Positions 2-64,000 of a stretch of DNA of 64,000 bases are shown piece after piece (within the stretch, counting starts at the first letter, position 1; each line of letters begins with the position of its first letter). The stretch covers positions 62,001 to 126,000 of IMG/VR virus record IMGVR_UViG_3300009177_000028. One strand, 5' to 3'. The position numbers were made by a program, and so were the translations under genes. The notes under the pieces were generated by a model that was not told the DNA's origin, did no database searches, and worked only from the letters and a program-made list of their open reading frames with translations.

Positions 2-3000
2 TATAATTTTGCCGTCACAAGACTGTCTGACTCGGCAGCCCTTTGGAGCGGCAGCTTATCCAATGTGGTTACTGGCGATCAAGTTAAGCTACTATTGACT
101 ACTGGATCTCCATCAGTCGGAGACCAGGTTGTTATTGACTATACACTTACAATTAATAACTTCTCACAAATTGTCATCGACTACAATAAGGGTGATTACT
201 TTATTGATTATACTTACTTGGCCGATGAAATCATTGTTAGTTATGAGTACGGCGATAACGTATTAGATTTCAGACACAATAGAAATCTACCAGCCAATTC
301 AGAATACTATGTTTCATATAAGGCCGGGGCTTTAAGAGACGCTTTGTTAAAGAATTTTGGTACCTTGGTAAACGTTCCAGAGCTAGCAACATTTGATGTT
401 GACTTTAACCGTGAACGTTATCGCGATGCATTAACGGCCGCCCTTACATCATTCATTCAGGGGCCAACCGTTACGGCTATCAAAAATATCGGTAAAACCA
501 TTTCTCATATTGAGCCAGAAGTAATTGAATCGGCCTTCTTGAATTGGTCTTTGGGAAGTAGCTTGCTTTACCCAGAATCAGTTACTACTACAGGCGCCTA
601 TCAGCTACTACCGGGCAAGTTTGGTAACGGCGCACTTGTTAACTCTTCAGATCAAAGTATTAAGTTTCCAGTTAACTCTAACCTAAGACTAGAAGAAGGA
701 ACTTTTGAAACATGGATTGTTCCACAATGGGATGGTTTAGATAACGATACTAGATTGACCTTCACAGTTCTTAAAGACGGATATGCTATTGCCCCAAACA
801 ATATCTTTATTGGAGCCGCTGAGTATCACCCAGATAGTAATGTTTTCTCTATAGACAAAAGAGGTAACGTAGGTGGCACCCCAAATACCAATAAAGATGG
901 TGTCTTTATTTATTACGATAAGGATATCTCTGGAAGCTTCTTCCGTTGGTATGTTGAAGTCATAGACGGATACGTTAGCCCAGGTAGTTCAACCTATCAA
1001 TTCACAATCTCATCAACTGGTAGCTTCTACGACAGTAAGAGTATGGTTCTACCAAAGCCATCTAACCTAAGCATCTTTACGGGCGCTAGTAGCCTTAGAT
1101 TCACTATTACTGGAGGTTCTGGCGGTATTGATGAGGGAGTTACCTTCGTTTCAGATACCGAACATTATCTATTGGATTTTGGAGAGACTCCATCTAAAAA
1201 TAGATTATCCATTTACAAAGATGTAAGTGGATACATGAACTTCCGTGTATTTGACCGTGAAAAGGCCGCCTCTGTTGTTAGCGCCGATGTCTCTGCCTGG
1301 CATGCTGGAGAGGCTCACCACGTAGCCGCTTCTTGGAAACTAAATACTATTAACGGACGAGATGAAATGCATCTCTTCATCGATGGATTTGAAGTTCCAA
1401 ATATTATTAAGTATGGGCAAAAGCTTCAACCATATCTTCATGAGAAATTTAGAACTGTCAACCCAGAAGAAATTGTAGGTTTGGTTGATCGTGACATTGT
1501 AGCTTCTGTCGATCTTCAGACAATTGCGGGCAACAATACAGTTACCTCTAGCCTTAATTTCAATACATATCAAATTTTCCCAGGAGATACAATCTTTATT
1601 GATGAGGTTGGTTTCTCTTTAACTGGCTATACAATTACTGGAGTTAGCGGGCAAACGTTAACTCTAAGCGCAAGTATGCCGGTTACTATGTCAAGCGGTC
1701 ACTTCTCAATTAATAGAACATCATTTACTGTTACTTCAGATATCGATGTCGCTCCAAATATTGCCGTTACTACCATCCATGCTTTGGTAGATGGATATTT
1801 GAATGGCACTGATATGTCAGGAAGTCTTGGCGGTAATACCGTTACCTCAGCCGGCTCCAATTTCGTAGCTGCTGGCGTTCTACCAGGTTACTTAGTTAGA
1901 ATTGATAATAACTCTTTGGACACTGCATATACCATTTTGTCGGTTGCAGCAAATACATTGACTATTAACACTACACTACCTATCAATTTCACGGGACAGA
2001 GTTTCCAGATTTACTCTAATGAAGAAGAGGAGATCCCAGGCGTCCGAGCCATTCGCCCAGCTTACTCAATCTTTAAGGATGGTTACTTTAATAACATTTT
2101 AACTATTTCAAATGATGTATATGCTAAGGATTTAATCCTAGTAAGAACATTAGGGTTAAACCATAGAAAAGTTAAGAGACAATATTATGTTTGGAGTACC
2201 GGTCAGGAAAACATTCTAATGACCAAGCTGCCACCTCCAATTTCTTTGGATGAAGCAACCATTAGAAAAGTAATCTTACCTTCCAGCCTAGTCGGCCCGT
2301 CTAACTCTACTCTTTCATTAGGAGTATTTACCTCCCCTAATTTCCCAGGAGTATGGTGCTCTAATTCTCAGTATGGAAGAACTCTAAGTGTTAATGTTGC
2401 AGGAAACAATGTAGATTTCTCTACGCCAGTTCAAGTAACTATTAATGGGCAAGTAGGCATCAATACTATTAATGAAACCATTTCTTTCACTGACTATGGT
2501 ATTAAAGATACGGTTAACCAATTTATCAAAGTAAATTATGTTAACGTAGTAGTTAAGCCAATTGTCAGCACTAAAAATGCACTTACCGTTGATGTAAAAG
2601 AAAAGTACACTATTACTTACAGTGAGTCTAGCGGAGAGGTACCAGTAGTTCGTTTCAGCTATCATATTGGTGGCGGCTATGGTCTTTATCAGGTCGGCAC
2701 TAATGCTGTTAGAGATGATAGCTTCTTGTTTAGCAATTTAGATAATACCAACTACCTAATAATTCACACCCCTGCTTCTGTAGCTGGATACTATCAGATT
2801 ACTGGTTTGTCTGAGGATAGACATACCATTTATGTTAACCCAACAACCGCAGCTACCACTTTACCCCTTCCAAGCTTTAGCAATGGAACATATCAAGTAC
2901 TTAACGTAAACTCTTACAGAAGCGGTTTGCAGAACGGGTACTTTACTTTCGAGGCCGCCAAGCTACCTTCTCAAGCCTATTTCCTTAGCCAAGGATTCTA

Positions 3001-4678
3001 TGAGCTAGAATACTTTACTTATACTAGTATCAAGTTTGATCCGGTTAATAGTAAAGCCTACTTGGGTACTGATTTTCATGGCCATCACCAGCTTAATGGT
3101 ATCATTGATCAAGTTAAGATCTATTCAAATATGTTGACGGACACTCGTATTGGTGAAACTATTCCAGCCAATCAACGATCTATTACAAAAGATTTTAACT
3201 CATTGAAGCCATTGGTAGTTGACAGTAATACTTTGGTCTTAATTGACTTTGATAGTTATCCATTTACTAATAGCGCCAATTACTATATTAATACTAATAA
3301 GAGTAAGGAACATTTCCAGTCTTCAGTAGTTATTAATGAAACTTTTGGAAATAGTTTGGTTATTCTAGATAAGCCAGTTCATTTAGAGAACAATGGTATT
3401 TTAGATACGCAGAAAGAAGGCACCATTGAATTCTGGGTCAACCCATTATTTGACACGGCCAATGACCCAACCGAGAAGTTCTACTTTGATGCTTTTGGAG
3501 CTGTGGTGACAGAAGCCGTAAGCGTCAATAGCACAGCAGTTAAAATTTCTGCCCCCGTCAGTCGAATTTTAAGCGTCAAGCTAAAGAGCGGTGACCCTCG
3601 CATCGATTACTTCGCAGGTGGAAAGATAGAAATTGATACCCAACACGCCACCCAAGAAGAAGTGACTAGTATCGGTACAGGAAGCGCTATTGTTACCAAA
3701 CCAATCTTACAGGTAGTAACAGTCAAGGTAGTAGGTGATTTTGTTGGCACTGATTATTTTGATGGTGGCTCTATTGGTAGTGATTTGAAAACTATCTATT
3801 TAGGCAGACCATTACCAGCCAGCAATTTACCATTAGTTGTTACCTATCAGACAACAGAAAACAAGAACGTTACCTTAAATACTCAAGTAATTAGGTTAAA
3901 TAAGAAACTACCATATCAGAACTCCCATGTTGTAGTTAACTACATTCCTAAGGGTCTTCAGGGAGATAGAATCTCTATCTTCAAAGATAGGGTGGGCTAC
4001 ATCAATTTTGCCATCTTTGCCTCAGGCACCAACTATGTGGTTAGGGCTCCAACTCGCTGGGCCAGAAACACTTGGCACAGAGTTAAGGCCAGCTACAAGA
4101 TCAATGGTGGAATTGGCGCCGATGAAATGAGATTGTTCTTAGACGGCTATGAGTATACGGATGTAACCTTTGGTTCTGGTACCGTATTCGGGCAGTATCC
4201 ATTTGTCTGGGGCTCAGCCATGCCGGGCGATGTTCCAGGAACTGACGGATATGGTTTGATGGAAACCATTAAATTCAAAGACTCAATCAATGATTTGTAC
4301 ATTGGGTCCGAGTTTTCTGGTCAATCCCCAATTTTTAGCTTAATAGATAATTTTAGAATCAGCAATGTTTCTAGACCTATCTATGCTCCATATGGAGAGC
4401 CAATAGACATCAACTTTAGTACCAATTTGAGCACCGTCATCCCAGTTACTCAGGACTTGTTCACTACATATCTAAGTGATTTCGATGAAATAATCTCTCT
4501 AAACGATGATTTTGCTATCTTAAAGAACAGGAAAACAGGACTATTTGATTTTTCAGTTAATATTTTAGATTCTTTTGGTATAGTAAAAGATAACATTAAG
4601 AGTCAAGAAGCATTAGAGAAGCTAATAAAGGTACTCAAGCCTGCTAACTCTAGGGTATTTATCCAGTATATTAGGTGA
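2..4678 (+). CDS. 5'-truncated giant baseplate-wedge/tail protein with LamG (concanavalin A-like) domains
   Basis: The frame is open from base 2 (YNFAVTRL...), so the GTG at 65 is not the true start. LamG-type motifs: EGTFETWIVP...HHVAASW...MHLFIDG...GIIDQVKIY and EGTIEFWVNP...WHRVKASY...MRLFLDG...IDNFRISN. The N-part RYRDALTAALTSFIQGPTVTAIK and C-terminal LEKLIKVLKPANSRVFIQY resemble P2 gpI/Mu gp48-type wedge motifs. Confidence 0.7.
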   Translation, partial: YNFAVTRLSDSAALWSGSLSNVVTGDQVKLLLTTGSPSVGDQVVIDYTLTINNFSQIVIDYNKGDYFIDYTYLADEIIVSYEYGDNVLDFRHNRNLPANSEYYVSYKAGALRDALLKNFGTLVNVPELATFDVDFNRERYRDALTAALTSFIQGPTVTAIKNIGKTISHIEPEVIESAFLNWSLGSSLLYPESVTTTGAYQLLPGKFGNGALVNSSDQSIKFPVNSNLRLEEGTFETWIVPQWDGLDNDTRLTFTVLKDGYAIAPNNIFIGAAEYHPDSNVFSIDKRGNVGGTPNTNKDGVFIYYDKDISGSFFRWYVEVIDGYVSPGSSTYQFTISSTGSFYDSKSMVLPKPSNLSIFTGASSLRFTITGGSGGIDEGVTFVSDTEHYLLDFGETPSKNRLSIYKDVSGYMNFRVFDREKAASVVSADVSAWHAGEAHHVAASWKLNTINGRDEMHLFIDGFEVPNIIKYGQKLQPYLHEKFRTVNPEEIVGLVDRDIVASVDLQTIAGNNTVTSSLNFNTYQIFPGDTIFIDEVGFSLTGYTITGVSGQTLTLSASMPVTMSSGHFSINRTSFTVTSDIDVAPNIAVTTIHALVDGYLNGTDMSGSLGGNTVTSAGSNFVAAGVLPGYLVRIDNNSLDTAYTILSVAANTLTINTTLPINFTGQSFQIYSNEEEEIPGVRAIRPAYSIFKDGYFNNILTISNDVYAKDLILVRTLGLNHRKVKRQYYVWSTGQENILMTKLPPPISLDEATIRKVILPSSLVGPSNSTLSLGVFTSPNFPGVWCSNSQYGRTLSVNVAGNNVDFSTPVQVTINGQVGINTINETISFTDYGIKDTVNQFIKVNYVNVVVKPIVSTKNALTVDVKEKYTITYSESSGEVPVVRFSYHIGGGYGLYQVGTNAVRDDSFLFSNLDNTNYLIIHTPASVAGYYQITGLSEDRHTIYVNPTTAATTLPLPSFSNGTYQVLNVNSYRSGLQNGYFTFEAAKLPSQAYFLSQGFYELEYFTYTSIKFDPVNSKAYLGTDFHGHHQLNGIIDQVKIYSNMLTDTRIGETIPANQRSITKDFNSLKPLVVDSNTLVLIDFDSYPFTNSANYYINTNKSKEHFQSSVVINETFGNSLVILDKPVHLENNGILDTQKEGTIEFWVNPLFDTANDPTEKFYFDAFGAVVTEAVSVNSTAVKISAPVSRILSVKLKSGDPRIDYFAGGKIEIDTQHATQEEVTSIGTGSAIVTKPILQVVTVKVVGDFVGTDYFDGGSIGSDLKTIYLGRPLPASNLPLVVTYQTTENKNVTLNTQVIRLNKKLPYQNSHVVVNYIPKGLQGDRISIFKDRVGYINFAIFASGTNYVVRAPTRWARNTWHRVKASYKINGGIGADEMRLFLDGYEYTDVTFGSGTVFGQYPFVWGSAMPGDVPGTDGYGLMETIKFKDSINDLYIGSEFSGQSPIFSLIDNFRISNVSRPIYAPYGEPIDINFSTNLSTVIPVTQDLFTTYLSDFDEIISLNDDFAILKNRKTGLFDFSVNILDSFGIVKDNIKSQEALEKLIKVLKPANSRVFIQYIR
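4642..4658 (+). promoter_or_regulatory. Candidate phage late promoter T(A/G)CTAA-N6-RGYAT
   Basis: TGCTAA-CTCTAG-GGTAT lies inside the 3' end of the upstream gene, ending 29 nt before the ATG at 4687, the same spacing as the copy at 30471. Confidence 0.4.
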
Positions 4679-4686
4679 GATAGAAT

Positions 4687-7600
4687 ATGACCAAACGCAC
4701 CCCCGTATCTGCCCAAAAGAATATTTGGTTCGATGCCCAACAGGTAGACGACTCAGACTTAACTTTAGAGCAAGATTTTAACGATACAGTTGAATCTGCC
4801 ACCATCAATAACCATGTTGGTACTGGTGTACTTCCAGAAGTTTTGGTTCAAAATGTGTTGTTTGACTCGGAGGATGTACAGGGTTTCTTGGACGGATTGG
4901 CCATTTCCCCTCAAAGTCAGCCAGCCGACAATAATCTAGGAAATCAACTAGAAATCACCCTAACTGGCTCACTAGCCGCTAGCCGCAAGGCAGTCAAGGT
5001 GGCCGTTATTGGTTTAGATTTCCAAAGCAATTTACAATACGAGACCTTTACTTTTAGGACTAATGAAGTTCAAGTTGGTCGTAAACACTTTGCCAAGCTT
5101 TTAGTTCTTCTATTTAACGATTTTATTGGCGACCCAGACTTATCCCTTAATTTGGGCGGTCATTTGGTTATCAGAGAAGCTCGCCCAATGTCTCTTTCCC
5201 GTGCCCCTATCATGGCTGCCCAGGACCAAGAGCCTAATCTATTTTTCAGAGACTTTTTTATTGATGGGTTTAGTACTTTAACCTCTCTACTTCAAAACGC
5301 ATTACCACTTTACAATATTGATGCGCTTGATCTTAGAACGGGTGATGTTGATAAGAAAATTTTACTTAATGGCGATGTAACTACCCAGATTGGTGAAAAG
5401 TTTTTAGCCACCACCAATAATATTCAGAAAATCACTTTACTTCTTTCTGTAAGAAACACTGAAGTTGGTTCGGAAACTGACCTTACTTGGAACGGCGACA
5501 TTATTCTAAGCATCTACCCACTTCAATCTAGCGTAGATTGTCCCGGTGATATTGCGCCAACTCTTCCAATTGACTTCTCTCCATCTAATATCCCTGTAGC
5601 TCAGGTAAGCACCAACTATGCTACCCTACTAGCTTCTGGTATTGTATTGGATTCTGTGCCACAACCTATTGACTTTGTCTTCAGTAATAGTCCAGTAGCG
5701 GGCGGCAACGTTCTTGAAACCGGAACCTACTATGCCTTAGCTCTTAAGAGAAGCGGTTCAGCCAATAAGTGCGATATTCTAATCGATGTTGGTAGCGCGC
5801 TAACAGAAGAATCAAGACTTACCACCTTTACCGGATCACTTTGGATTGATATCCTAGATGAGCAACTTTGGTTCCAGATTTGGACCGATGCAGCTAAGGT
5901 CTCAGATGGGCAGGCTTATGAGTCAGGTCATGGAATTATTGTTCCTAAGACCATTCAAGATTCATCTACTTTAACTACGACTGATTATTGTAAAGATGGA
6001 ATTCAGTTCGTAGGCAATAGCGTTTATCGTGCCGTTGTATCTGCCGTTACCGAAGAGAGCGTTCCTGTTCCAGATCAAAGAACTGGCAATCCAGTCTTGA
6101 CTCGTCAGCAATTCGTTCCTGATATCCAATTACTTAACAATATTGATATTGCCAATCTAGAGGTTGCCTCCGAACCGCTAATGTTAGGGGCAATTGCAGA
6201 TAAAAACAGAAAATTCTTTGATGCATTCTCCTCATTAATAAGTGCCAAGCTTTACAGCGCAACATTTGTTCAGGATGAATTGATTATTAAAATTATTGAT
6301 GATCCAACGGATACTACTCGTTACGATACATCTGTTGTAAGCTTGCAGAGCAATCTATTAAATGGTGATTTTATTGGTGCCAAGATTACACCTAATGCTA
6401 ATAACTCTACTATTGTTTACAGGATCGCTGACGCAAAGCTATGCACCTATATTTTAGGCGATGTTGACGGAGACGGCCTTATCACATTAGAGGATTTAGA
6501 TCTTCTAAACTCTTATTTGAATGTCGACTTAACTACAGGATTAGCGCTTAACAGTGTTGTTGTAACTGATGGTATTACTACTACTTATTCTAATGGTTAT
6601 CTAAATAAGATTCAACCATTCACCAATTTATTTAGCGTAGAATTCCAGCTTATTGACTCTGATGGTTATGTGGTTGCTTCCGGTACTGACGGAGTAATGA
6701 TTGCTAATCCAAATGATGAGCGTTTGGCCCAGTTTACCAGCGCTACAGTTTCCTTTAGTACTATCGTAGGTCTCAGTTCTTATACATTTATTATTAATGC
6801 ACCTGGCAACGATGCTAATCATGGTGGATTTGAAATCGTTAGCGTAGATTCTACTAGTGACGTTATTACTATTAGAAAAGTAATATTGAGTGGAGATTCC
6901 ATTAGTCAAATGCTTAGAGCAGATATTGACGGAGATTTCCATATCACTAATATCGATGGTTATTTACTACAAGAATATATTGATCGTGCAGTTTTAACTA
7001 CATCTCCAACAACCGTTTATCCGGCCCCATCTACCAACCCTTATACTAAGATTGGTAATACCTTCAATGTAATTAGATTCAAACTAGAACAATTCGTTGA
7101 TAGAACGGACGACTATACTTCTGTAGGCAGCGGAAGATCGGATGCAGTCCATCCGCGCCCAGATATGTTCATTGGAGATGGCTACTTCTCTAATCACGAC
7201 TTCGTAGCATCTCCAGTTCCTATTTTAATTCAAAAGCAATTGACTTGGGACGAATCGTTAATCGTAACGAATAACCATCCAAAATTGGTTCCAAGTATTT
7301 TCACCACCTTAACTGGCTTCGAAAAGAATGAATGTGAGTTAGATGGCATTAGCTGTAGCGTATATGGAATACCACCTGATTTTGATCCAGGTCGAGTAGA
7401 CTTCTTTGTACCAAATAATTTGATTATTGGTGAGGGCGGTGAAATTCAGAGACCAGACGGATATTTCTATAAGGTAGACTTCGAAGTAGGAACTATCGTA
7501 CTAGAAATTCCAGATGGATTGTTTGGGTCCGAAAGAACCATTAACATCCTTGATGATTTTATTTCTGACTACACTGGTCATGGCGTTACTCGTCTTGGCT

Positions 7601-8703
7601 TCCCAGCTATGAGATTTGCAGATTGCAGTTTCGTTCAAGCTGATGCATTAGCCAAAGACCAACTAAGATTCTCAGTATCTGTACAGTCATTTTCTCCAAA
7701 TACCAATGGATTAGATATTGACGGTTACGCTGGAGTTATCGTAGATGGTAAGATGGGTGTTTCTGTCGACTATGCTACCGGTTTATTGACTTTGAACTTT
7801 ACTAACCTATACCAAGATGCTGTTCTAGAAACTTTGAGTACCAAGGTTCAGGTCCATGTCTTCTTAAAGAAGGGTGGATTTAACAACAGACCACTATTCA
7901 TCGACTCAACTAAAGTTCAGAACATGTTGAAGCTGATCAGTGTCTTTAGCGGCGCCAATGTTGGAGGCCCATCCGCTCTAGTTCAACTAGAGGCAGATGT
8001 AAGTGGCATCTTACCTATCATCCACGGTGGTACTGGTCTAGATGCAGTTGGCCCATTCGGTACAGTCCTTACCAGCAATGGTAGCGGACTTAGTTACCAA
8101 TTCGTTAACAGTCTTCTAAACGTTATCTCATTCTCAACTGGAATTGCCTCTGCTGATAGAGTACCAAAAACAGATGGTTATGGATTCTTAGACCCAAGTT
8201 TCTACTACAAGAACCCAGTTTATATTTCCGCTGTGGCTGGAACATATTCCCATGACGGATACACGCCATCTACTATTGGTGCCTTCATGTTTAGGTTTGA
8301 TAATTATATTCTAGAAGGACTTGAGAGTATTAAATTAGAGTGCATTCTAGAGAGCACGAATGCTGCCAATACGGCGGGCATTCAGTTGTTCAACGTAAAT
8401 ACACATACCTACTTGAACTTAACCGGACCAAGTGCAGCTTTGACTACAACCAACGTCTCCGCAACCTTCTTGACATCCCAAGATATTAAGACTCAACTTT
8501 CTGCTGGTGCCACTAACTTCATTTATGAAATTCATTTGAACCTAAGTCCATCAGCTCCTGGTACTGATACCGCTATTTGCAAAATGGCTAGATTAGTAAT
8601 GACTTACAATAATCTAACCTTGAACGGATCCAGTGCAATTGCACCTCCAACGTCTCATAGCTACAACTTTGTACCGTTCTTGCCATCCCCAACCCCATCC
8701 TAA
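4687..8703 (+). CDS. Large virion/tail-associated protein with two dockerin-like EF-hand repeats
   Basis: 1338 aa. N-terminal WFDAQQVDDSDLTLEQ resembles phage tail-protein starts. Contains LGDVDGDGLITLEDLDLLNSYL and RADIDGDFHITNIDGYLLQEYI, plus the fibre motif LPIIHGGTG. Confidence 0.6.
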   Translation: MTKRTPVSAQKNIWFDAQQVDDSDLTLEQDFNDTVESATINNHVGTGVLPEVLVQNVLFDSEDVQGFLDGLAISPQSQPADNNLGNQLEITLTGSLAASRKAVKVAVIGLDFQSNLQYETFTFRTNEVQVGRKHFAKLLVLLFNDFIGDPDLSLNLGGHLVIREARPMSLSRAPIMAAQDQEPNLFFRDFFIDGFSTLTSLLQNALPLYNIDALDLRTGDVDKKILLNGDVTTQIGEKFLATTNNIQKITLLLSVRNTEVGSETDLTWNGDIILSIYPLQSSVDCPGDIAPTLPIDFSPSNIPVAQVSTNYATLLASGIVLDSVPQPIDFVFSNSPVAGGNVLETGTYYALALKRSGSANKCDILIDVGSALTEESRLTTFTGSLWIDILDEQLWFQIWTDAAKVSDGQAYESGHGIIVPKTIQDSSTLTTTDYCKDGIQFVGNSVYRAVVSAVTEESVPVPDQRTGNPVLTRQQFVPDIQLLNNIDIANLEVASEPLMLGAIADKNRKFFDAFSSLISAKLYSATFVQDELIIKIIDDPTDTTRYDTSVVSLQSNLLNGDFIGAKITPNANNSTIVYRIADAKLCTYILGDVDGDGLITLEDLDLLNSYLNVDLTTGLALNSVVVTDGITTTYSNGYLNKIQPFTNLFSVEFQLIDSDGYVVASGTDGVMIANPNDERLAQFTSATVSFSTIVGLSSYTFIINAPGNDANHGGFEIVSVDSTSDVITIRKVILSGDSISQMLRADIDGDFHITNIDGYLLQEYIDRAVLTTSPTTVYPAPSTNPYTKIGNTFNVIRFKLEQFVDRTDDYTSVGSGRSDAVHPRPDMFIGDGYFSNHDFVASPVPILIQKQLTWDESLIVTNNHPKLVPSIFTTLTGFEKNECELDGISCSVYGIPPDFDPGRVDFFVPNNLIIGEGGEIQRPDGYFYKVDFEVGTIVLEIPDGLFGSERTINILDDFISDYTGHGVTRLGFPAMRFADCSFVQADALAKDQLRFSVSVQSFSPNTNGLDIDGYAGVIVDGKMGVSVDYATGLLTLNFTNLYQDAVLETLSTKVQVHVFLKKGGFNNRPLFIDSTKVQNMLKLISVFSGANVGGPSALVQLEADVSGILPIIHGGTGLDAVGPFGTVLTSNGSGLSYQFVNSLLNVISFSTGIASADRVPKTDGYGFLDPSFYYKNPVYISAVAGTYSHDGYTPSTIGAFMFRFDNYILEGLESIKLECILESTNAANTAGIQLFNVNTHTYLNLTGPSAALTTTNVSATFLTSQDIKTQLSAGATNFIYEIHLNLSPSAPGTDTAICKMARLVMTYNNLTLNGSSAIAPPTSHSYNFVPFLPSPTPS

Positions 8704-8715: not shown

Positions 8716-8743
8716 TTGACAAGTATTTTTGGCAATTTACATT
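8716..8743 (+). promoter_or_regulatory. Sigma-70-like promoter (TTGACA-16 nt-TACATT)
   Basis: Perfect -35 at 8716-8721 and a TAnnnT -10 at 8738-8743, placed directly after the structural genes and 7 nt before the ATG at 8750. Confidence 0.5.
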
Positions 8744-8749
8744 GCGAGC

Positions 8750-54860: not shown

Positions 54861-56411
54861 TTAGGCTCCGTAGAATAGAATTTGGTTTACATAAATGGTA
54901 TTATCCCAAGGCCAGCAAATTCCATTTTGTAATTGGATAAATTCTCCATTTAATCCGATTCTATGATTCTTTGGTACGTGTGTTCCGGTAAATTTTACTG
55001 TTCTTAATTTAACTCTAGCCAACTGATATTGATTTGTAACTCCGGGAAGACACAATAGTCCATCTGAAATCGGAATTGTACCAGCAGTTGTATTATAACC
55101 AATTTTATAATCAGTTAAGTTTTGTCCGAAAACGTCAGGGGTACCATCACCTCTTAAAGCTTTAACTAAAGTTCTATAAGATCTTGCTGTCGTGGAGTCT
55201 CCAGAATGGGTGCGCATGACAAATCCACCACCATAGCTTGCAGTAGTGCTTGAAGTATATACGCTGCCAGTGTTAAATGTGTGACCCATAAAAGCTACGG
55301 GATGAAGATCTGCTCCTTGAGGATATAATCTTGTTGGAATTTCAAAGTGAAAACTGCTGTGTAAATTAGCTTGAAACAAATCTTGCTCTCTAATATGAGC
55401 AATTAGAAATGTTTTATCTCCAATCATAGTTACCGCAGTTTGTCCACTAGTATATGCTTGACTGGTATTTGGGTTATAACTAAACAGACATTGATAACCA
55501 TCATTCTGGAATCCGTTATAAACAGTTCCACTGTTTGCGGTATAAGTGCCGTTACCTGTAGAGCCAGTCAATGTAAATGTAGTAGATCCAGTTACAGTCA
55601 CGAGCCATTGGCCGTTAGCCGCAGTATTACCTAAAGCTCCAACAATATTAACGGTTTGAGCGGTTGTGAAGTTATGAGGTGAAGCTGTAGTGCATGCTAT
55701 CGGGGAGGCGTTGGTTGCAGCAGTAATTGTTAAAGGTACACCTGACCAAGAGCCGGTTCCTGAAATGCCGACTCCTAGGGTGGCGCTGGTGTTTGTGCCA
55801 AGATTAGCTATTTGAATCTGTGAATTTGCTTGTCCAGGGTTAATGCTTGGAGCATCAGTTTGCAGGATCATAAAATTTCCATTGCCAGCCGATGTTGCTA
55901 AGGCATCTGATCCCGTTTCCATATCTACAACCCTATAAACAACACCAGAACGTGCATTCATAGAAGGGTGTTTGGTAGTCGGGTTAGGAAACCCTCCAGT
56001 ATTGATATTAACAATAATTTGATTGCTAGAAACAACCCTACTAATTATATACATAGAGTCTTCAGAACTATTAGAATTTGGCACCCACATGACTAGCATT
56101 TTACCAGCCATAGTTGGGCTAAAAGGCGCTGATGAAGTAGTGGTAAATAAGCAATCTCCGCTAACTAAATCTCCGCTGACTGCAACATGTGATCCATCAG
56201 TGCCTGAAGCCATTAAACTGGTTCCACCAGTAAAATTGGTAGGAAGAACGGTGCCGTTATTAGATGCAAATCCGCCAGGAATTGTTGGGGAAGCGGTTCC
56301 GTTAATACAAAACCCCCAAAATTCATACGTCCATTTCATTCTCCAAGCAACACCTCTGCCTCCGGCGTTTGCGTTGGGATAGACCATTCCTCGAATAAAT
56401 TTCATACCCAT
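54861..56411 (-). CDS. Virion-type scaffold protein class A1 with one module Y
   Basis: YEFWGFCINGT, YRVVDM, INPGQANSQ, NQYQLARVKL, GEFIQLQNG.CWPWD. Confidence 0.72.
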   Translation of the reverse strand: MGMKFIRGMVYPNANAGGRGVAWRMKWTYEFWGFCINGTASPTIPGGFASNNGTVLPTNFTGGTSLMASGTDGSHVAVSGDLVSGDCLFTTTSSAPFSPTMAGKMLVMWVPNSNSSEDSMYIISRVVSSNQIIVNINTGGFPNPTTKHPSMNARSGVVYRVVDMETGSDALATSAGNGNFMILQTDAPSINPGQANSQIQIANLGTNTSATLGVGISGTGSWSGVPLTITAATNASPIACTTASPHNFTTAQTVNIVGALGNTAANGQWLVTVTGSTTFTLTGSTGNGTYTANSGTVYNGFQNDGYQCLFSYNPNTSQAYTSGQTAVTMIGDKTFLIAHIREQDLFQANLHSSFHFEIPTRLYPQGADLHPVAFMGHTFNTGSVYTSSTTASYGGGFVMRTHSGDSTTARSYRTLVKALRGDGTPDVFGQNLTDYKIGYNTTAGTIPISDGLLCLPGVTNQYQLARVKLRTVKFTGTHVPKNHRIGLNGEFIQLQNGICWPWDNTIYVNQILFYGA

Positions 56412-56456: not shown

Positions 56457-57965
56457 TTACGAGTACCAAGTATCTAAAACTTCTGGAATAGAATATGGGC
56501 CGCCGCATGGGAAAGCTGGCGCATTTGCTAATGAAATTTGCGTATCTACCCAAACAACAGCCTGCGGAGGATCGCATGAAGTATCATACGCTCTTAATTT
56601 ATAATATTGGGTTAAAGTGGATAAGTTTAGTGGTAGAGTGCCGGTTCGATAAATTGTTTTAAAATAGTCCAAAGATCTAACAACATTGGCAATTCTCAAA
56701 TCTTGCACACTAAAATTAGCTTCTTCTTTAGTTGGTGAAGAGGTAACTAAATAAAGCGGGGTAGCTCCGATTACCAAAGCGCCCGGATTTGCACTAGTTG
56801 CGGTAAAAATTAATCTTGTATTAGCTGCCGGAATAACAGTTGAGTTGCTAAAAACTGTAGTTTTTCCGCCAGCAGCGCTTTGAATGCCGATTGAAACTGT
56901 GTTACTTGATGTTGATGTAGTATATAAGGTTTCAAATGTAGTTGACCCTTCAAAAAATTTAATTTCTGCATTAAGGGTGCCACCGGCCAATGAATTCATA
57001 CGCCATTCAATTACAAAAGTTCTGTTGGGGGAAGATCCCACTGTTGTGGTAAAAATTCCCAAACCAGTTCCGCTAGTGGTTGTGTCTCTTTCACAAACGT
57101 TAATGGTTGCCCCAAGTGAGGAGTTTGGTAAGCTAAAATTAAATGCATTTGTAGCTTGTCCGAATTCCACGAACCCATTTGATGAAGCATTAACAGAAGT
57201 ATATGTTATTCCCCATACGGTTACTGGAAATGGTAAAGCAACAGTAGTCATTACTTCATCGCCATGGTTTCCAATATCTGTTACACCAGAAACATAAGTT
57301 CCAGTAGAAGATGTAATGGCGTAACTAACGTCATTATAAAGTACATAAGGCCCCGGCATAGTCGTGCTTTGTAACTGGGCGGCACCGTTGTAAGTTAATA
57401 GTAAACATCCATTTAGATAAGATCTCATGGCGGTCCCATCATGCGTAAACCCTATGTGACACCATTGATGTAATGGAATCGGGAAATCGGTAACTGTTTT
57501 ACTTGTTTGTGCAGTTGGTGAGGTAGCACATCCAAAATAAACATCTTGCCCGCTGTTACCAGAACCATTAGAGACTTCCCAAGAAAAGAATGGGGCAGCC
57601 CATGTATTTGTTGTTGTGTGCTGTCTAAATAGTTTTTTAACGAATTGTTGAAAATTACTATTATTAAGATAGCTTCGTAAATTAACCCAAAATGAAATAG
57701 TAAATGGTGGTTGTGTATTTATATTTTCTGCACCAAAAATATAGTTTCTGGTGGCCGAAGCGCCAGAAGGATAGTTACCAGCTCCAGGGAAATATGGGCA
57801 GTTACCACCAAATACCCCCGTGCCTGTTCTGATTATTGTACCACTAACAGATAGATCCGTAGACGCACTTCCGGCTAATATACTTCCGGTGTTTTTGTAA
57901 ACTCCAGAGGTCTCATCTAGAAGCCATACGTAGCCATCATTTGTATCGGGTGGTATTCTTGCCAT
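56457..57965 (-). CDS. LamG-domain virion-type protein with inserted NIDO-like domain and class C tail
   Basis: FTISFWVNL...WCHIGFTHDG..MRSYLNG...VQDLRIANVVR. Insert ALPFPVTVWGITY.SV.ASSNG...GSSPNRTFVIEW. Tail YYKLRAYD. Confidence 0.7.
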   Translation of the reverse strand: MARIPPDTNDGYVWLLDETSGVYKNTGSILAGSASTDLSVSGTIIRTGTGVFGGNCPYFPGAGNYPSGASATRNYIFGAENINTQPPFTISFWVNLRSYLNNSNFQQFVKKLFRQHTTTNTWAAPFFSWEVSNGSGNSGQDVYFGCATSPTAQTSKTVTDFPIPLHQWCHIGFTHDGTAMRSYLNGCLLLTYNGAAQLQSTTMPGPYVLYNDVSYAITSSTGTYVSGVTDIGNHGDEVMTTVALPFPVTVWGITYTSVNASSNGFVEFGQATNAFNFSLPNSSLGATINVCERDTTTSGTGLGIFTTTVGSSPNRTFVIEWRMNSLAGGTLNAEIKFFEGSTTFETLYTTSTSSNTVSIGIQSAAGGKTTVFSNSTVIPAANTRLIFTATSANPGALVIGATPLYLVTSSPTKEEANFSVQDLRIANVVRSLDYFKTIYRTGTLPLNLSTLTQYYKLRAYDTSCDPPQAVVWVDTQISLANAPAFPCGGPYSIPEVLDTWYS

Positions 57966-60162: not shown

Positions 60163-61407
60163 TCACGCATATGTTACTTGTACTCTAGCATTGCTACAGA
60201 TAACTCTATCTGTTACCGAGCCACCCGTCTTCCAAAGTCTAACTTCATATCTACTAGTTACATCATTTCTTAAATGTCCATTGGATGAACCGATAGTCAT
60301 AACAGCAGAGTACTCCGTTGTAGTAGTATTGGTAAAATGAAATTGTGAATTTGTTACTACAACATTATGTGTAGTATCAAATAAGTGAACATATCCATCA
60401 AAAGATGGGGCCGAAATTTCAACGTCAGCCATAAATTTAACAGTTCTTACTCTACCATCTGATAAGGCAGTTGGATACTTAGTCATGTCAATGAATCTTC
60501 CGCCTATTCCTGCTGGCGTAGTAAATCCATTTAAAACAACTCCGGTAACAAATTGAATATCATTTGGTAAAGCTAACGGCTGCAAGGCGCTAACTACAAT
60601 TGGAAGACTGTAAGTAATTTCAATTCTAGCATTTCTACAAATTACTTGATCATTTGTTCCACCGCCTGTTAGATAAATCTGAACTTCGTACATGGTATCA
60701 TCACAGGCATCATCACGAATGTATCCATCAGTTGTTCCTGATTCGATAATGGCGCTCAATTCTACTGAGGCTAAACTGCTTGTTGATAATGTCGAATTTA
60801 AAATAATTACATTGTGAGTAATATCTTTAATTTGAACAAATCCGACAGTTGCAGAATTAGTTACTTCTAAATCTGCTTTGAATGTCATTGTTCTGTTTCT
60901 GCCATCTGGATAGCTGGCTGGATACAATTCGGTGTCAATCTGACGCGCTCCTACACGAGTAGGATTAGAAGTATTTGCGTAACCGTCACCAGATAAGAAG
61001 CCGATATCGTTCGGTAAAACAACAGAAGTTGGCAAAACGTTCAAAACGATATTGCTCAAAGTCTGAGGAATCCAGGCGATACCGCTCCAAGCAATAACCT
61101 GATTAACGGTTGGTGCGTTATCTGCTAGTGGTCTGCCTTGAAGGCCGACGACTCGACCATTAGAAAGAGTGCCACTTAGGTCTCCGCCCAAATTATTAAT
61201 TTGAATAGCGGTGATTCTGGCATCCATATCATCCAAACGGGCCCTGACGGTGGTGTAGGATCCGCTAGGCTTGACACCTAACTCAGCTTCAATAGCGATG
61301 ATAGCATTGCGTAATCTGTTAACCGTATCGCCCATGACGGGAGTGGAATCATCCGTCACAAGAGGTAAGGTAGCGTTTGTATCTATCTGAGCTGGGTATT
61401 TTGACAT
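60163..61407 (-). CDS. Virion-type protein with shared N-terminal attachment module and duplicated C-terminal domain
   Basis: MSKYPAQIDTN..LP...ELGVKPSGSYTTVRARLD and GGDLSG...GLQGRP, then two copies of LPNDI.F...YP....DGR.RT..F.AD.E...DITH/DTTHN...Y(E)V..Y/W..GG...D.VIC.NAR. Confidence 0.72.
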   Translation of the reverse strand: MSKYPAQIDTNATLPLVTDDSTPVMGDTVNRLRNAIIAIEAELGVKPSGSYTTVRARLDDMDARITAIQINNLGGDLSGTLSNGRVVGLQGRPLADNAPTVNQVIAWSGIAWIPQTLSNIVLNVLPTSVVLPNDIGFLSGDGYANTSNPTRVGARQIDTELYPASYPDGRNRTMTFKADLEVTNSATVGFVQIKDITHNVIILNSTLSTSSLASVELSAIIESGTTDGYIRDDACDDTMYEVQIYLTGGGTNDQVICRNARIEITYSLPIVVSALQPLALPNDIQFVTGVVLNGFTTPAGIGGRFIDMTKYPTALSDGRVRTVKFMADVEISAPSFDGYVHLFDTTHNVVVTNSQFHFTNTTTTEYSAVMTIGSSNGHLRNDVTSRYEVRLWKTGGSVTDRVICSNARVQVTYA

Positions 61408-61467: not shown

Positions 61468-61539
61468 TAGTTAAGAGGTAAGAACCGCCTCAAAATCCGC
61501 AAAGAACTAAATGTTGCCAATAGGTTAAGGCTTATAAAT

Positions 61540-64000
61540 ATGTCCAATTATCCTTTCAGCCAAGACAATAACATCACCCTTCCTGGAGTTTCAGGAACTT
61601 CGGATGAAGATGTTGCTATTACCGCCCTTCGAGAGGCAGCATTTGCAATTGAAACAGAATTAGGCATCAAACCGAGCGGTATTTATACCGATGTTCGTGC
61701 CAGATTAGACATCCTAGAGTCCAGAATAAATGGATCAATTCCGTCTGGAGTCACCAACGATGGCTATATTCTTAGCCCATTACTTCTTTGGAATACTTCT
61801 TCAAACGTTACCCTATCCATCAGCGATGGTTATGGTGTTCCAACCGAAAATAGAATTAACGGCTCTCTATTTATGAGGGCTGACGGTTACGCCAATAATG
61901 AACTTTATGTTCGTAGAAGCGGAGCCTGGTATCCAATTCAAACAGATTTGTGGGTTGCAAGCGGAGATTTATCTGGAACTTATCTTTCCCAAACAGTTAT
62001 TGGCCTTCAGGGTAAATCACTTAATTCATCCTTAGCAACTATAAATACTTTTGGTTTATCTAGAGACGGCTACCATTTAACTTGGAATGCTTCAGGACAA
62101 TATTGGGAAGCTCAAACCGGATTTAAAGCTGCTGGTGACTTAGCAATTACCAATAGCCCACCTTGGGGAAGAACTAGCCAAGTAGTAGTTGGCCTTCAAA
62201 ACAAGGCCATTGCTCCGGCAGCTACAACGCCAAGTGACGGTGATGTATTAGTTTTTGAAACCACTGATAATCACTGGGAACCACAGCAACCAGCCGTAGT
62301 TTTTGGTGGGTCTGTGCTCGCTGGAGACGGCTACGTAACCAGAACCAATATTCGTTCTAACAAATTACTTCAATCACCTTCCGCCAATACTTCTAGCAAA
62401 GTTGGAATGGTTAACTTTGGCAGCCGCTCATCAGGTCTTACTGCCGGAACTACTGAAAACTATGCCGCCATTCTTAGCGGTGATAGACACGCAGCTAGCG
62501 GACTTTTCAGCCTAATTACCGGTGGTGATACCAACGTAGCTAGTGGTCAGTATGCCACGGTAATTAACGGAACCACCAATACAGCCAGCGCAAATTATTC
62601 TGTAGTTATGGATGGTTACAGTAATACGGCTTCTGGAATTCATTCCTACGTATTGAATGGTTCTGCTAACGCTCCAGCGGCTCTTTATTCTTCAGTTCTA
62701 AATGGTATTTCTAATACTATTTCTTCAACTTCTACTCATGCTGCCATTGGATTTGGTTCAAATAACCAAATTACTGGAGCAACCGCAACTTACACCCTAA
62801 TCATGGGTGGAAGCGGCAACCAAGCCTCAGCTCAGAACGTCTTCCTTGGAAATCCAACTGGAGCTACTGTTCAGTCTACTTATTCAACAGTCTTGACTGG
62901 TTTGAATAATTCCATAAACTCAACTTCTAATTTCTCTGCTATAATTAGCGGAAATACTAATACAGTATCTGGATCTTCTGGATTTGGTTTTATTGGAACT
63001 GGTAATAACATTACTGTTACTGGATTATATGCTACTGTTCTTAATGCAACGGTTGCTACTGCTAACGGTCTTCATAGCTTAGTTCTAAATGGTAATACTA
63101 ACTCTGTTACTGGAAGTTTCTCAACTATCGTCAACGGAAATAATAACACTATCAGCGGACCGATCGCTTATGGCACTATCTTGGACGGATACGGTAACTC
63201 AGTATCTGGTGCTGGCGGATTAGTTGACGGTTATAATAACACTGTCTCTGGTATTTGGTCAACCATTCTAAATGGAAACGGAAATAGTATTTCCTGTAGA
63301 AATAGCACCATTCTCAACGGATCTTCCAACTCAATGGATGCCGCCAGCTCAGAAAATACAATTCTGGTTGGTACCTCCAACGTTCTAACTGGAACCAACA
63401 ACACAGTAACTATCGGAAGTGGTAATACGTTAACAAACGTATCCAGTCACTTTGTTCTAGGTAGCTTCAATACCCATCAATCTAACTTCTCATTCACCAA
63501 TGGAAGTTTAAATACAAGTTTGTCCGGAGCAGCCTTCAATAGGATTTGGGGATCTTCTAATACCATTGGAACTAACGTTACGATCAACGGTATCTTTGGT
63601 AACTCTAATGCTCTTGGACCAACCAGCACCACTAGCAACAACTTCGTAGCAGGCTCTTCCAATATCGTTGACGGCTATGGTAACAGCACCGTTCTAGGCT
63701 CTACAAATATTGCCAACTCCAGCTTTGGATTAGTCCAAGGACAGTATGGTAAGTCAAGAATGTTTGGACAACAGGTCCACGCTAACTCCAGATTTACTGC
63801 CGGTAGAGTGGGTGAAGCTCAATGGTCTAGGATGGTATTGACCGGAAATGCAAACTCCGGTGCCTCTATTCCTCTTCTATTGCAGGACGCCGCCCCAACA
63901 CCAATTACCTTTGTAGATGGCTATTCTTATGATCTACAAATTCGTGTAATGGTAGTTAATACTTCACCAATTAGCCCTAACCCAGTGGTCCCAGCTAGAT
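61540..64000 (+). CDS. 3'-truncated fibre/adhesin-like virion protein with ~15-aa beta-roll repeats (not in ORF track)
   Basis: My translation is open from ATG 61540 to the window end: MSNYPFSQDNNITLP...ELGIKPSGIYTDVRARLD, GDL.G...V.GLQ repeats, then YAAILSGDRHAASG/LFSLITGGDTNVASG/QYATVINGTTNTASA repeats resembling YadA-head (Hep/Hag) beta-rolls. Confidence 0.8.
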   Translation, partial: MSNYPFSQDNNITLPGVSGTSDEDVAITALREAAFAIETELGIKPSGIYTDVRARLDILESRINGSIPSGVTNDGYILSPLLLWNTSSNVTLSISDGYGVPTENRINGSLFMRADGYANNELYVRRSGAWYPIQTDLWVASGDLSGTYLSQTVIGLQGKSLNSSLATINTFGLSRDGYHLTWNASGQYWEAQTGFKAAGDLAITNSPPWGRTSQVVVGLQNKAIAPAATTPSDGDVLVFETTDNHWEPQQPAVVFGGSVLAGDGYVTRTNIRSNKLLQSPSANTSSKVGMVNFGSRSSGLTAGTTENYAAILSGDRHAASGLFSLITGGDTNVASGQYATVINGTTNTASANYSVVMDGYSNTASGIHSYVLNGSANAPAALYSSVLNGISNTISSTSTHAAIGFGSNNQITGATATYTLIMGGSGNQASAQNVFLGNPTGATVQSTYSTVLTGLNNSINSTSNFSAIISGNTNTVSGSSGFGFIGTGNNITVTGLYATVLNATVATANGLHSLVLNGNTNSVTGSFSTIVNGNNNTISGPIAYGTILDGYGNSVSGAGGLVDGYNNTVSGIWSTILNGNGNSISCRNSTILNGSSNSMDAASSENTILVGTSNVLTGTNNTVTIGSGNTLTNVSSHFVLGSFNTHQSNFSFTNGSLNTSLSGAAFNRIWGSSNTIGTNVTINGIFGNSNALGPTSTTSNNFVAGSSNIVDGYGNSTVLGSTNIANSSFGLVQGQYGKSRMFGQQVHANSRFTAGRVGEAQWSRMVLTGNANSGASIPLLLQDAAPTPITFVDGYSYDLQIRVMVVNTSPISPNPVVPAR

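What the first reader, a model, noticed from the sequence alone, without database searches (positions are those of the whole stretch)
65..64000. DGY tripeptide marks virion-type proteins only: a candidate modification or assembly sequon
My manual count finds about 35 DGY in ~11,600 aa of structural-type ORFs: 6 in 2-4678, 7 in 4687-8703, 10 in 61540-end, 3 each in 60163 and 51817, 2 in 45222, and 1 each in 34161, 48948, 54861 and 56457. I found 0 in the roughly 40 non-structural ORFs (8750-30466, 38060-44890). The codons vary synonymously (GAY GGN TAY), so selection is on the protein, and the motif occurs in unrelated domains. Inference: it could be a Tyr O-glycosylation or other modification site for the phage's own glycosyltransferases, a maturation-protease site, or a docking motif. 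Tyr O-glycosylation is established in some S-layer proteins. Part of the excess could be ordinary beta-turn DG bias.
Basis: partly seen in the sequence, partly recalled or inferred. Interest (0 to 1): 0.75.

Follow-up and report, generated by a model that had tools for sequence, protein, structure and literature searches.

The report
DGY motif on huge-phage virion proteins
The tripeptide Asp-Gly-Tyr is far more common than chance allows on the outward-facing parts of this roughly 400-kb phage's particle proteins and keeps being re-invented at new positions in relatives, so selection wants the motif itself, although what reads it (an enzyme, a binding partner or only protein folding) is still unknown.

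Summary
There are 35 in-frame DGY in 11,694 aa of structural-type ORFs and none in 33 other ORFs. Expected counts are 2.0 from composition shuffles and 6.4 from dipeptide-preserving shuffles (z = 12.8).

In the whole 204-kb virus record, DGY is the most over-represented of all 8,000 tripeptides (102 observed vs 19.8 expected, p = 5e-39). Codons follow genome usage, so selection acts on the protein. The signal needs all three residues in order: NGY 3, DGF 3, EGY 0, other permutations 0-5.

About 90 related IMG/VR contigs (up to 480 kb) share the excess. DGY sites are conserved twice as well as average tripeptides. In two ortholog families DGY ranks first of about 2,400-2,900 tripeptides for independent new alignment positions.

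In the tail sheath, all 18 DGY positions lie outside the conserved core. Unrelated controls (T4, phage G, ordinary sheaths) show only a 1-3-fold excess.

The modification-sequon idea remains untested. Glycosyltransferase and dTDP-glucose dehydratase genes lie next to the DGY-richest genes, but a DGY-poor distant relative keeps homologous glycosyltransferases.

My leading reading, at about 0.45, is an exposed recognition motif. A purely structural hairpin idiom is the main rival, at about 0.3.

The parts
2..4678 (+). C-terminal 1,558 aa of a 2,390-aa virion (baseplate or fibre region) protein with a ConA/LamG-like domain. It has 6 DGY, at 776, 965, 1790, 2078, 4142 and 4244.
   Evidence: Orthologues in 14 relatives show 22 distinct DGY columns.
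4687..8703 (+). 1,338-aa virion protein with 7 DGY, at 6661, 6955, 7177, 7456, 7720, 8173 and 8254. All lie in the C-terminal half.
   Evidence: The family has 13 DGY columns, 5 of them present in only 1 or 2 of the 16 sequences.
34161..38015 (+). 1,284-aa Gly-rich fibre-like protein with an E1_FCCH-like domain. It has 1 DGY, at 34713.
45222..47651 (-). 809-aa fibre-like protein with an E1_FCCH-like domain. It has 2 DGY, at 47232 and 46356.
48948..49517 (-). 189-aa protein with 1 DGY near the N-terminus, at 49434.
51817..53385 (-). 522-aa Gly-rich fibre-like paralogue with 3 DGY, at 52936, 52900 and 52714.
54861..56411 (-). 516-aa fibre-like paralogue with 1 DGY, at 55494.
56457..57965 (-). 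502-aa protein with 1 DGY at residue 10, at 57930.
60163..61407 (-). 414-aa protein that shares an N-terminal module with the 34161 and 61471 ORFs. It has 3 DGY, at 60979, 60721 and 60391.
61471..64000 (+). First 843 aa of a 932-aa fibre protein with a left-handed beta-roll (LbR_Ice_bind). It has 10 DGY. 10 of its 11 DG and all 10 of its GY are DGY.
9453..14903 (+). Sugar-enzyme cluster directly downstream of the two DGY-richest genes. It holds a GT4-like gene (9453-10577, below the Pfam cut-off), GT2 (10568-11308), an Fpg/Nei DNA glycosylase (11293-12132), an unknown gene (12143-13120), GT2 (13123-13953), and a dTDP-glucose 4,6-dehydratase-like gene (13953-14903). It is a candidate writer only. 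No link to DGY is shown.
   Evidence: families. (syntenic in all relatives). (no terminator-like site before 16288). (a DGY-poor relative keeps homologous GTs).
8729..30466 (+). Replication and metabolism block used as the internal control, with 0 DGY among its DG dipeptides. It encodes tubulin, helicases, DnaB, a sigma-like protein, RNR, PIN-PhoH, M24 peptidase and others.

Best explanation
**What it is.** DGY is a real, ordered, protein-level short motif. It is kept and repeatedly re-created on the outward-facing accessory parts of the virion proteins of a clade of huge (about 340-480 kb) contractile-tailed phages.

**How it most likely works.** It is most likely an exposed recognition element. 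The Gly lets the chain turn at the end of one beta-strand. This presents the Asp carboxylate and the Tyr phenol together on the particle's outside, where a partner reads them.

Two kinds of partner fit the data:
- A late phage enzyme that modifies the Tyr, making DGY a sequon. Glycosylation from a dTDP-6-deoxyhexose pathway is the obvious candidate. My estimate is about 0.2-0.25.
- A ligand or partner protein, meaning many weak adhesion or docking contacts. My estimate is about 0.2-0.25.

**Shown.**
- The excess and its specificity for all three residues in order.
- The restriction to virion proteins and, in the sheath, to the non-core part.
- Above-average conservation.
- Recurrent independent gains.

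**Inferred.**
- That the sites are solvent-exposed. This rests on domain-level reasoning, because no coordinates were available.
- That something reads the motif.
- Which partner it is.
For: **Size of the excess.**
- 35 observed vs 6.4 +/- 2.2 under dipeptide-preserving shuffles.
- First of 8,000 tripeptides in the 204-kb record, p = 5e-39.

**Chemical and order specificity.**
- Y follows 35 of 97 DG but only 3 of 123 NG (p = 3e-11).
- D precedes 35 of 70 GY but only 3 of 62 GF (p = 2e-9).
- EGY is 0 of 12. D-x-Y has x = G in 35 cases and any other residue in 9.
- The five other orderings of D, G and Y occur 0-5 times.

**Restriction to virion proteins.**
- 0 of 34 DG in non-structural ORFs of the window are DGY (p = 7e-6).
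- In a complete 480-kb relative, 81 DGY cluster in the 260-400 kb structural block. About 8 lie in the remaining roughly 300 kb, Kelch proteins aside.

**Outer parts only.**
- All 18 DGY columns in 50 sheath orthologues lie at residues 59-618, none in the conserved core 630-940.
- In 17 distant giant sheaths, the N-terminal remainder has 26 DGY in 13,244 aa. The C-terminal 400 aa have 2 in 6,800 aa.
- The tube-initiator-like protein and neighbouring large proteins of 780, 1,692 and 683 aa have none.

**Selection.**
- DGY tripeptide identity across orthologues is 0.60-0.62, against 0.27 for all tripeptides.
- DGY ranks first of 2,914 and of 2,399 tripeptides for distinct alignment columns per expected occurrence. 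The values are 2.8 and 4.8, against medians of 0.27 and 0.54.
- Replacements are mostly whole-tripeptide swaps such as LGS, NGQ and TAT.

**Context and arrangement.**
- There is no extended context, and DGY windows are not homologous to each other.
- Tandem clusters 3-12 residues apart occur in N-terminal segments of small proteins.

**Clade-wide pattern and precedent.**
- 429 observed vs 84.9 expected in 77 sheath loci. Every one of 18 other loci shows a 4-9-fold excess.
- Precedent for phage-encoded virion glycosylation is as cited in PMC12619734.
Against: - There is no direct evidence of any modification or binding.
- Unrelated virion proteins show a weaker excess of the same kind. The T4 virion module has 10 vs 3.2 expected, and ordinary sheaths 14 vs 6.7. 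Part of the signal is therefore a general structural bias.
- In the confident parts of the AlphaFold models, DGY sits at strand ends and hairpin turns of well-folded domains, as a structural element would.
- Some DGY belong to fold repeats. Examples are Kelch blades, beta-roll turns, and an Ig-like domain conserved in distant sheaths.
- A DGY-poor distant relative keeps homologous GT4 and GT2 domains.
- Among 39 sheath representatives, DGY content is heterogeneous (p = 0.013). It does not cluster on the tree (11 changes vs 12.2 in shuffles), so no clean gain or loss of a 'reader' is visible.
- No Tyr-glycosylation sequon is known.
Confidence: 0.45

Rival explanations
1. DGY is a purely structural idiom. 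It is an Asp-Gly tight turn or bulge followed by a Tyr that starts the next strand, a hairpin cap that stabilises exposed beta-rich domains of long-lived extracellular particles. It was amplified in this clade because the clade carries very many such accessory domains. Nothing reads it.
For: - DGY lies at strand-turn boundaries in the confident model regions. Fragment residues 40-42 lie between two strands, and sheath residues 574-576 and 579-581 flank a hairpin.
- Hydrophobic residues often flank it: 36 of 102 before and 37 of 102 after.
- It is part of repeat units in Kelch, beta-roll and LamG-like strands.
- DGT is the next most common DGx.
- A 2-3-fold excess is also seen in T4 virion genes and ordinary sheaths.
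- The distribution over huge-phage sheaths is broad and patchy, without tree structure.
Against: - Structurally equivalent NGY and DGF are not enriched at all, at 3 each against 35.
- Non-virion proteins of the same phage, which also contain hairpins, have 0 of 34.
- A related lineage has 0 of 23.
- DGY ranks first of all tripeptides for independent gains.
- Tandem DGY clusters occur in Pro/Gly/Ser-rich N-terminal segments.
- Density is 5-18 times that of the control phages.
Confidence: 0.3
2. DGY is a maturation-protease cleavage site, as one of the reader's options proposed.
For: A prohead-protease-like domain protein exists in a complete relative.
Against: - There are up to 10 sites per protein. 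They lie inside conserved, confidently folded domains, including the sheath.
- The protease-domain protein and the neighbouring 1,758-aa protein have 31 DG and no DGY.
- Cutting fibres and sheath at these places would destroy them.
Confidence: 0.02
3. The signal is a composition, repeat, DNA-level or mutational artefact. This would mean a GC or codon effect, a hidden repeated domain, a DNA motif, or a trace of a diversity-generating retroelement.
For: - The structural proteins are Gly-rich, and some are paralogues with shared modules.
- A small double-DGY module is shared by five proteins.
Against: - Dipeptide-preserving shuffles give z = 12.8.
- Permutations of the same three residues are at background.
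- Codons follow genome usage, GGA is common at the Gly, and only 12 of 114 DNA hits are out of frame.
- DGY windows give 7 similar pairs, against 3-11 for random windows.
- Sites are depleted, not enriched, in the C-terminal 30% of proteins, which is where retroelement targets lie.
- No D enrichment occurs at -2 or -4, as a DxDxDG calcium loop would need.
Confidence: 0.01

Closest known systems
NX(S/T) sequons on the HMW1 adhesin, modified in the cytoplasm by the HMW1C/NGT glycosyltransferase. The gain of N-glycan sequons on viral surface proteins is a related case. This comparison rests on my own knowledge.
   Same: - A three-residue motif is scattered at dozens of sites over very large beta-rich surface proteins.
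- The motif is kept and gained as a unit.
- The candidate enzyme would act in the cytoplasm before release.
   Different: - The acceptor here would be Tyr (or Asp), not Asn.
- No GT41-type enzyme was looked for or found.
- No modification is shown.
Tyrosine O-glycosylation of S-layer proteins in Paenibacillus alvei and Thermoanaerobacter (PMC2943079).
   Same: Tyr is the acceptor on a surface-lattice protein, and rhamnose-containing glycans need a dTDP-6-deoxyhexose pathway.
   Different: - Those glycans are transferred outside the cytoplasm by an oligosaccharyltransferase.
- Only a few sites per protein are known.
- Virion proteins fold in the cytoplasm.
Glycosylation of mycobacteriophage capsid and tail-tube subunits by phage glycosyltransferases (Freeman et al. 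2023, as summarised in PMC12619734).
   Same: Phage-encoded glycosyltransferases modify exposed virion proteins.
   Different: - The sites there are at the C-termini of the two major subunits, as summarised in PMC12619734.
- They are not a scattered Tyr-centred tripeptide on some 30 proteins.
- That paper was not readable here.
The Bacteroidota general O-glycosylation motif D-(S/T)-(A/I/L/V/M/T). This comparison rests on my own knowledge; related papers were listed.
   Same: It is a three-residue motif starting with Asp that marks many surface proteins.
   Different: - The acceptor is the middle Ser or Thr.
- The process is periplasmic.
- The host of this phage is unknown.
Asp-Gly beta-turns with a G1 bulge, followed by a beta-branched or aromatic residue. 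This comparison rests on textbook knowledge of hairpin statistics.
   Same: DGY sits at strand-turn boundaries in the models, and DGT is the second commonest DGx.
   Different: The generic rule predicts NGY, DGF, DGV and DGI as well, in all protein classes. None of that is seen here.
His-x-His metal-binding repeats in the T4 long-tail-fibre tip. This comparison rests on my own knowledge.
   Same: It is a minimal motif repeated along fibre proteins whose meaning lies in side-chain chemistry rather than in fold.
   Different: Those repeats are regularly spaced on a trimer axis. DGY is irregularly spaced and also occurs in the sheath and in globular domains.

Membership tests
Protein glycosylation sequon (Tyr-linked, phage-encoded writer) | A glycan or other group is covalently attached at the motif. 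| not testable with these tools
   This needs mass spectrometry or a structure of virions or recombinant proteins.
Protein glycosylation sequon (Tyr-linked, phage-encoded writer) | A dedicated transferase and sugar-nucleotide supply are encoded and co-vary with the motif. | tested here: inconclusive
   - Two GT2 genes score above the Pfam cut-off. One GT4-like gene scores below it.
- A dTDP-glucose 4,6-dehydratase-like gene scores 356.6 bits against a cut-off of 365.1.
- The cluster is syntenic in all relatives.
- A DGY-poor relative keeps homologous GT4 and GT2 domains.
- The complex prediction gave no answer.
Protein glycosylation sequon (Tyr-linked, phage-encoded writer) | The motif is defined by exact residues, enriched on substrates only, and gained and lost as a unit. 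| tested here: met
Protein glycosylation sequon (Tyr-linked, phage-encoded writer) | The acceptor side chain is solvent-exposed. | tested here: inconclusive
   Only domain-level evidence is available. All sheath sites lie outside the conserved core. The models give secondary structure but no coordinates.
Generic beta-turn or hairpin structural motif | The motif is located at a strand-turn-strand junction. | tested here: met
   Four sites lie in confident model regions. The sample is small.
Generic beta-turn or hairpin structural motif | Conservative equivalents (Asn for Asp, Phe for Tyr) are similarly favoured. | tested here: not met
   NGY is 3 of 123 NG and DGF is 3 of 62 GF, against 35 DGY.
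Generic beta-turn or hairpin structural motif | The motif is present at a similar level in beta-containing proteins whatever their location or lineage. | tested here: not met
   - 0 of 34 DG in non-virion ORFs.
- 0 of 23 in the L132 lineage.
- T4 and phage G densities are 5-18 times lower.
Maturation-protease site | Sites lie at propeptide or domain boundaries of processed head or internal proteins. | tested here: not met
   Sites lie inside folded fibre and sheath domains. The protease-domain protein and its large neighbour have none.
DxDxDG-type calcium-binding loop | Asp or Asn at positions -2 and -4 relative to the DG. | tested here: not met
   No D or N enrichment occurs at -2 or -4 in 99 sites.
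Diversity-generating retroelement variable region | C-terminal location and codons derivable from AAY by adenine mutagenesis. | tested here: not met
   35 of 102 Gly codons are GGA. Sites are depleted in the C-terminal 30% of proteins.

The most novel reading that the evidence does not exclude
DGY is a three-residue sequon for cytoplasmic O-modification of tyrosine, most plausibly glycosylation with a 6-deoxyhexose-containing glycan. A late phage enzyme would write it onto the exposed accessory domains of some thirty virion proteins. New sites would be gained continually, as with glycan shields of animal viruses. The system would be shared by several lineages of huge phages.
Probability: 0.2. 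Interest if true: 0.85.

Novelty: new variant of a known kind. Interest (0 to 1): 0.68.

Why it matters
If something reads DGY, this would be the first short linear motif or sequon described for phage particles. It would also be the first Tyr-centred one. It marks the exposed surface of a large, uncultured clade of 340-480 kb phages.

Such a motif would predict, from sequence alone, which proteins and which loops are on the particle's outside. It would give a handle for finding the enzyme or partner by phylogenetic profiling. It would also bear on how huge phages coat, stabilise or stick their particles.

If the motif turns out to be purely structural, it is still an unusually strong and specific hairpin signal, and a useful one for annotating and designing beta-rich surface domains.

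Tried and rejected
**Searches that found nothing useful.**
- Megablast of 21.8 kb against cultured phages gave no match. tblastn of the sheath gave only remote hits to Eggerthella phage LE2-3 and Bacillus phage G. There is no annotated close relative.
- PHROGs gave no family for any of the 10 window structural proteins.
- The protein Atlas gave no function for the two unknown ORFs in the sugar cluster.
- PDB sequence searches of three large DGY-free proteins of the relative gave nothing usable. The capsid Pfam model found nothing either. The major capsid protein was not identified, so its DGY status is unknown.
- Literature searches for DGY with phage or glycosylation, for Tyr O-glycosylation in phages, and for virion glycosylation found no description of this motif. 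Freeman et al. 2023 is not held.

**Predictions that failed or said little.**
- The AlphaFold model of the C-terminal 719 aa of the 1,338-aa protein was poor, with mean pLDDT 45.6. Only one of its seven DGY lies in a confident region.
- The complex prediction of three glycosyltransferases with a DGY-rich 100-aa segment returned 'no answer'. It is evidence neither way.
- The promoter and terminator scan was at shuffle level.

**Corrections to my own analysis.**
- The first sheath alignment included three non-sheath ORFs. It was redone cleanly.

**Readings rejected.**
- A hidden repeated domain.
- A DNA motif.
- A calcium loop.
- A retroelement trace.
- A clean lineage on/off pattern.

Full report
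**What the window is**

The window is bases 62001-126000 of a 204,387-bp IMG/VR virus record that CheckV rates 48% complete. Relatives reach 433-481 kb at 97-100% completeness.

It is a contractile-tailed huge phage:
- The record encodes a 940-aa tail sheath, supported by PHROG and Pfam hits and by fold matches to the phi812, T4, P1 and Mu sheaths.
- It also encodes a tube-initiator-like protein.
- The window holds a TubZ-like tubulin, helicases, DnaB, a sigma-like protein, ribonucleotide reductase, PIN-PhoH and an M24 peptidase.
- No close cultured relative exists.

**The observation**

- There are 35 in-frame DGY in 17 structural-type ORFs (11,694 aa).
- There are none in 33 other ORFs (8,799 aa).
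- All 35 sites were verified at the DNA level.
- The non-structural stretches contain no DGY in any real reading frame.

**Is it more than chance?**

- Per-protein composition shuffles give 2.0 +/- 1.4.
The observed count is 35, so z = 12.8.
- Over the whole record, DGY is the most over-represented of all tripeptides. It has 102 observed vs 10.6 or 19.8 expected, p = 5e-39. The next, GGG, is at p = 3e-10.

**Level of selection**

- Codons at DGY mirror genome usage: GAT 67 / GAC 35; GGT 43, GGA 35, GGC 17, GGG 7; TAT 65 / TAC 37.
- The DNA pattern occurs 114 times on both strands, and 102 of these are the in-frame sites.
- Selection therefore acts on the protein.

**Specificity**

- Y follows 35 of 97 DG but only 3 of 123 NG (p = 3e-11).
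- D precedes 35 of 70 GY but only 3 of 62 GF (p = 2e-9).
- EGY is 0, and DGW is 0.
- D-x-Y has G in the middle 35 times and any other residue 9 times.
- The other five orderings of D, G and Y occur 0-5 times in the window's structural set. In clade loci they occur 38-124 times, against 429 for DGY.
- No flanking position is strongly constrained.
- Windows centred on DGY are no more similar to each other than random windows from the same proteins, at 7 vs 3-11 pairs with E < 1e-3.
- One small shared module does exist. It is a paired DGY ten residues apart, found in five proteins.

**Where the sites are**

Within the record, DGY concentrates at 3-70 kb and 107-132 kb, which are the sheath, baseplate and fibre regions. 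It is rare elsewhere.

Sites are depleted in the C-terminal 30% of proteins, at 15 of 102 (p = 5e-4). They often cluster near N-termini of small proteins, 3-12 residues apart.

In the sheath:
- The three DGY lie outside the conserved C-terminal core.
- In 50 sheath orthologues, D411-G412 are invariant and Y413 nearly so.
- There are 18 DGY columns in all. All lie at residues 59-618 and none in 630-940.
- By established knowledge of sheath architecture, the conserved core faces the tube and the extra domains face outward. This is an inference, not something measured here.

The tube-initiator-like protein and three neighbouring large proteins have no DGY.

The AlphaFold models place the four sites that fall in confident regions at strand ends or hairpin turns. 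No coordinates are returned, so per-residue exposure could not be computed.

**Relatives**

- Sixteen loci around the 1,338-aa protein (46-72% identity) and two around the 414-aa protein all show a 4-9-fold excess.
- Seventy-seven loci around the sheath pool to 429 DGY vs 84.9 expected. In the same pool NGY is 70 vs 84.5 and DGF is 154 vs 103.
- A complete 480-kb relative has 81 vs 28.9. Most lie in its 260-400 kb structural block. Eight more lie in two Kelch-repeat proteins, with about one DGY per blade in the larger one.

**Evolution of the sites**

- DGY tripeptides are identical in orthologues 60-62% of the time, against 27% for all tripeptides and about 23-33% for matched classes.
- New sites also keep appearing. 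DGY occupies 18, 22 and 13 distinct columns in the three ortholog families.
- In the sheath and the 2,390-aa families, DGY ranks first of 2,914 and of 2,399 tripeptides for columns per expected occurrence. The values are 2.8 and 4.8. The medians are 0.27 and 0.54, and the 99th percentiles 0.81 and 1.64.
- The third family fell just under the expectation threshold of that ranking. There DGY was fourth of 3,724 by raw number of columns.
- Alternatives at those columns are mostly unrelated tripeptides such as LGS, NGQ, TAT and NPS.

**Controls in unrelated phages**

| Protein set | DGY count | Density per 1,000 aa |
|---|---|---|
| Window structural set | 35 | 3.0 |
| T4 virion module | 10 vs 3.2 expected (7 in annotated genes) | 0.62 |
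| T4 long fibres | 1 in 5,434 aa | 0.18 |
| Two 40-kb stretches of phage G | 4 in 24,209 aa | 0.17 |

**Breadth beyond the clade**

A profile search of 1.84 billion representative proteins with the sheath alignment shows a gradient of 1.76, 1.18 and 0.55 DGY per 1,000 aa with falling score.
- Ordinary-size distant sheaths have 14 vs 6.7 expected.
- In 17 distant giant sheaths, the N-terminal remainder holds 26 DGY (P(Y|DG) = 0.27). The C-terminal 400 aa hold 2 (P(Y|DG) = 0.056).
- A mild excess is therefore general to virion proteins. The strong excess extends patchily to the accessory domains of other huge phages.
- Among 39 representatives the content is heterogeneous (p = 0.013) but not clustered on a core-domain tree.

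**The glycosyltransferase idea**

Directly downstream of the two DGY-richest genes, on the same strand and with almost no gaps, lie these genes:
- a GT4-like gene, below the family cut-off;
- two GT2 genes;
- an Fpg/Nei glycosylase;
- an unknown gene;
- a dTDP-glucose 4,6-dehydratase-like gene.

The cluster is syntenic in all relatives. No terminator-like site precedes 16288, although the scan is at shuffle level.

Against a link:
- A distant relative with the same glycosyltransferase-tubulin-helicase-DnaB layout carries homologous GT4 and GT2 domains, at 29% and 26% identity.
- That relative has 0 DGY among 23 DG in its sheath and two other large structural ORFs.
- Two other distant lineages have DGY-rich sheaths, at 5 of 9 and 4 of 7 DG.
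- A complex prediction of the three transferases with a DGY-rich segment returned no answer.
- Phage virion glycosylation has precedent (PMC12619734).

**Weighing the explanations**

Chance, composition, hidden repeats, DNA motifs, calcium loops and retroelement traces are excluded by the tests above. A protease site does not fit the positions.

Two serious readings remain:
- **A pure hairpin idiom.** This explains the strand-turn location, the fold-repeat cases and the mild excess in T4. It does not explain why Asn and Phe equivalents are not used, why the phage's own non-virion proteins have none, why density is 5-18 times that of controls, or why DGY leads all tripeptides in new gains.
- **A recognition element read by an enzyme or a partner.** This explains those points. 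It has no direct support, and it must sit on top of a structural baseline.

I put recognition at about 0.45, split roughly evenly between a modification sequon and binding or docking. I put the purely structural reading at about 0.3. The rest is left open.

Noticed in passing
window 14927-16288: A TubZ/PhuZ-like tubulin gene sits between the sugar cluster and the helicase genes. The order glycosyltransferase, tubulin, helicase, IstB-like ATPase, DnaB is kept even in a very distant relative (L132).
   Followed up: partly
window 11293-12132: An Fpg/Nei-type DNA glycosylase (152 bits to the fpg model, below its cut-off) is embedded inside the glycosyltransferase cluster and is conserved there in most relatives.
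   Followed up: no
window 30492-34151 and 34161-38015; record 33516-34265: GGG is the second most over-represented tripeptide, at 102 vs 51. Several structural ORFs are 12-14% Gly, and one 250-aa ORF of the record is 32% Gly with long Gly runs.
   Followed up: no
window 45222-60156 (minus strand) and 34161, 60163, 61471 ORFs: A dozen fibre-like genes form a mosaic paralogue family that swaps modules, including E1_FCCH-like domains. Three otherwise different proteins share a 110-aa N-terminal module at about 54% identity, as expected for a common attachment domain.
   Followed up: partly
record ORFs 126254, 18230, 14970, 126738 and window 61471 ORF (residue 199): A small module with two DGY ten residues apart is shared by five proteins. 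Its pattern is roughly P-x-DGY-x-L-x-W-x3-DGY-W.
   Followed up: partly
G001 98255-99550 and 74787-75716 (loci L110, L109): The complete relative has two Kelch-repeat beta-propeller proteins outside the structural block. The larger carries six DGY spaced roughly one per blade, and the smaller carries two. They are an exception to 'virion proteins only', unless they are themselves packaged.
   Followed up: partly
L025 (T4 75-125 kb): The T4 virion gene module shows a mild DGY excess of its own, at 10 vs 3.2 expected. The sites are in gp7, gp8, gp12, gp18, gp27 and gp28. The T4 long tail fibres show none.
   Followed up: partly
window 26478-27827, 28425-29225, 22891-23532: The replication block holds a PIN-PhoH fusion, an M24 (methionine-aminopeptidase-type) peptidase and a sigma-70 region-2-like protein.
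   Followed up: no
G001 and G002 (records of L014 and L003): IMG/VR labels the 481-kb and 433-kb relatives 'provirus', although CheckV rates them 100% and 97% complete. Whether host flanks are present was not examined.
   Followed up: no
record 40304-42643 and 53227-54897: Two large proteins of the tail and baseplate block (780 and 557 aa) contain no Asp-Gly dipeptide at all. So do their orthologues in the complete relative.
   Followed up: no
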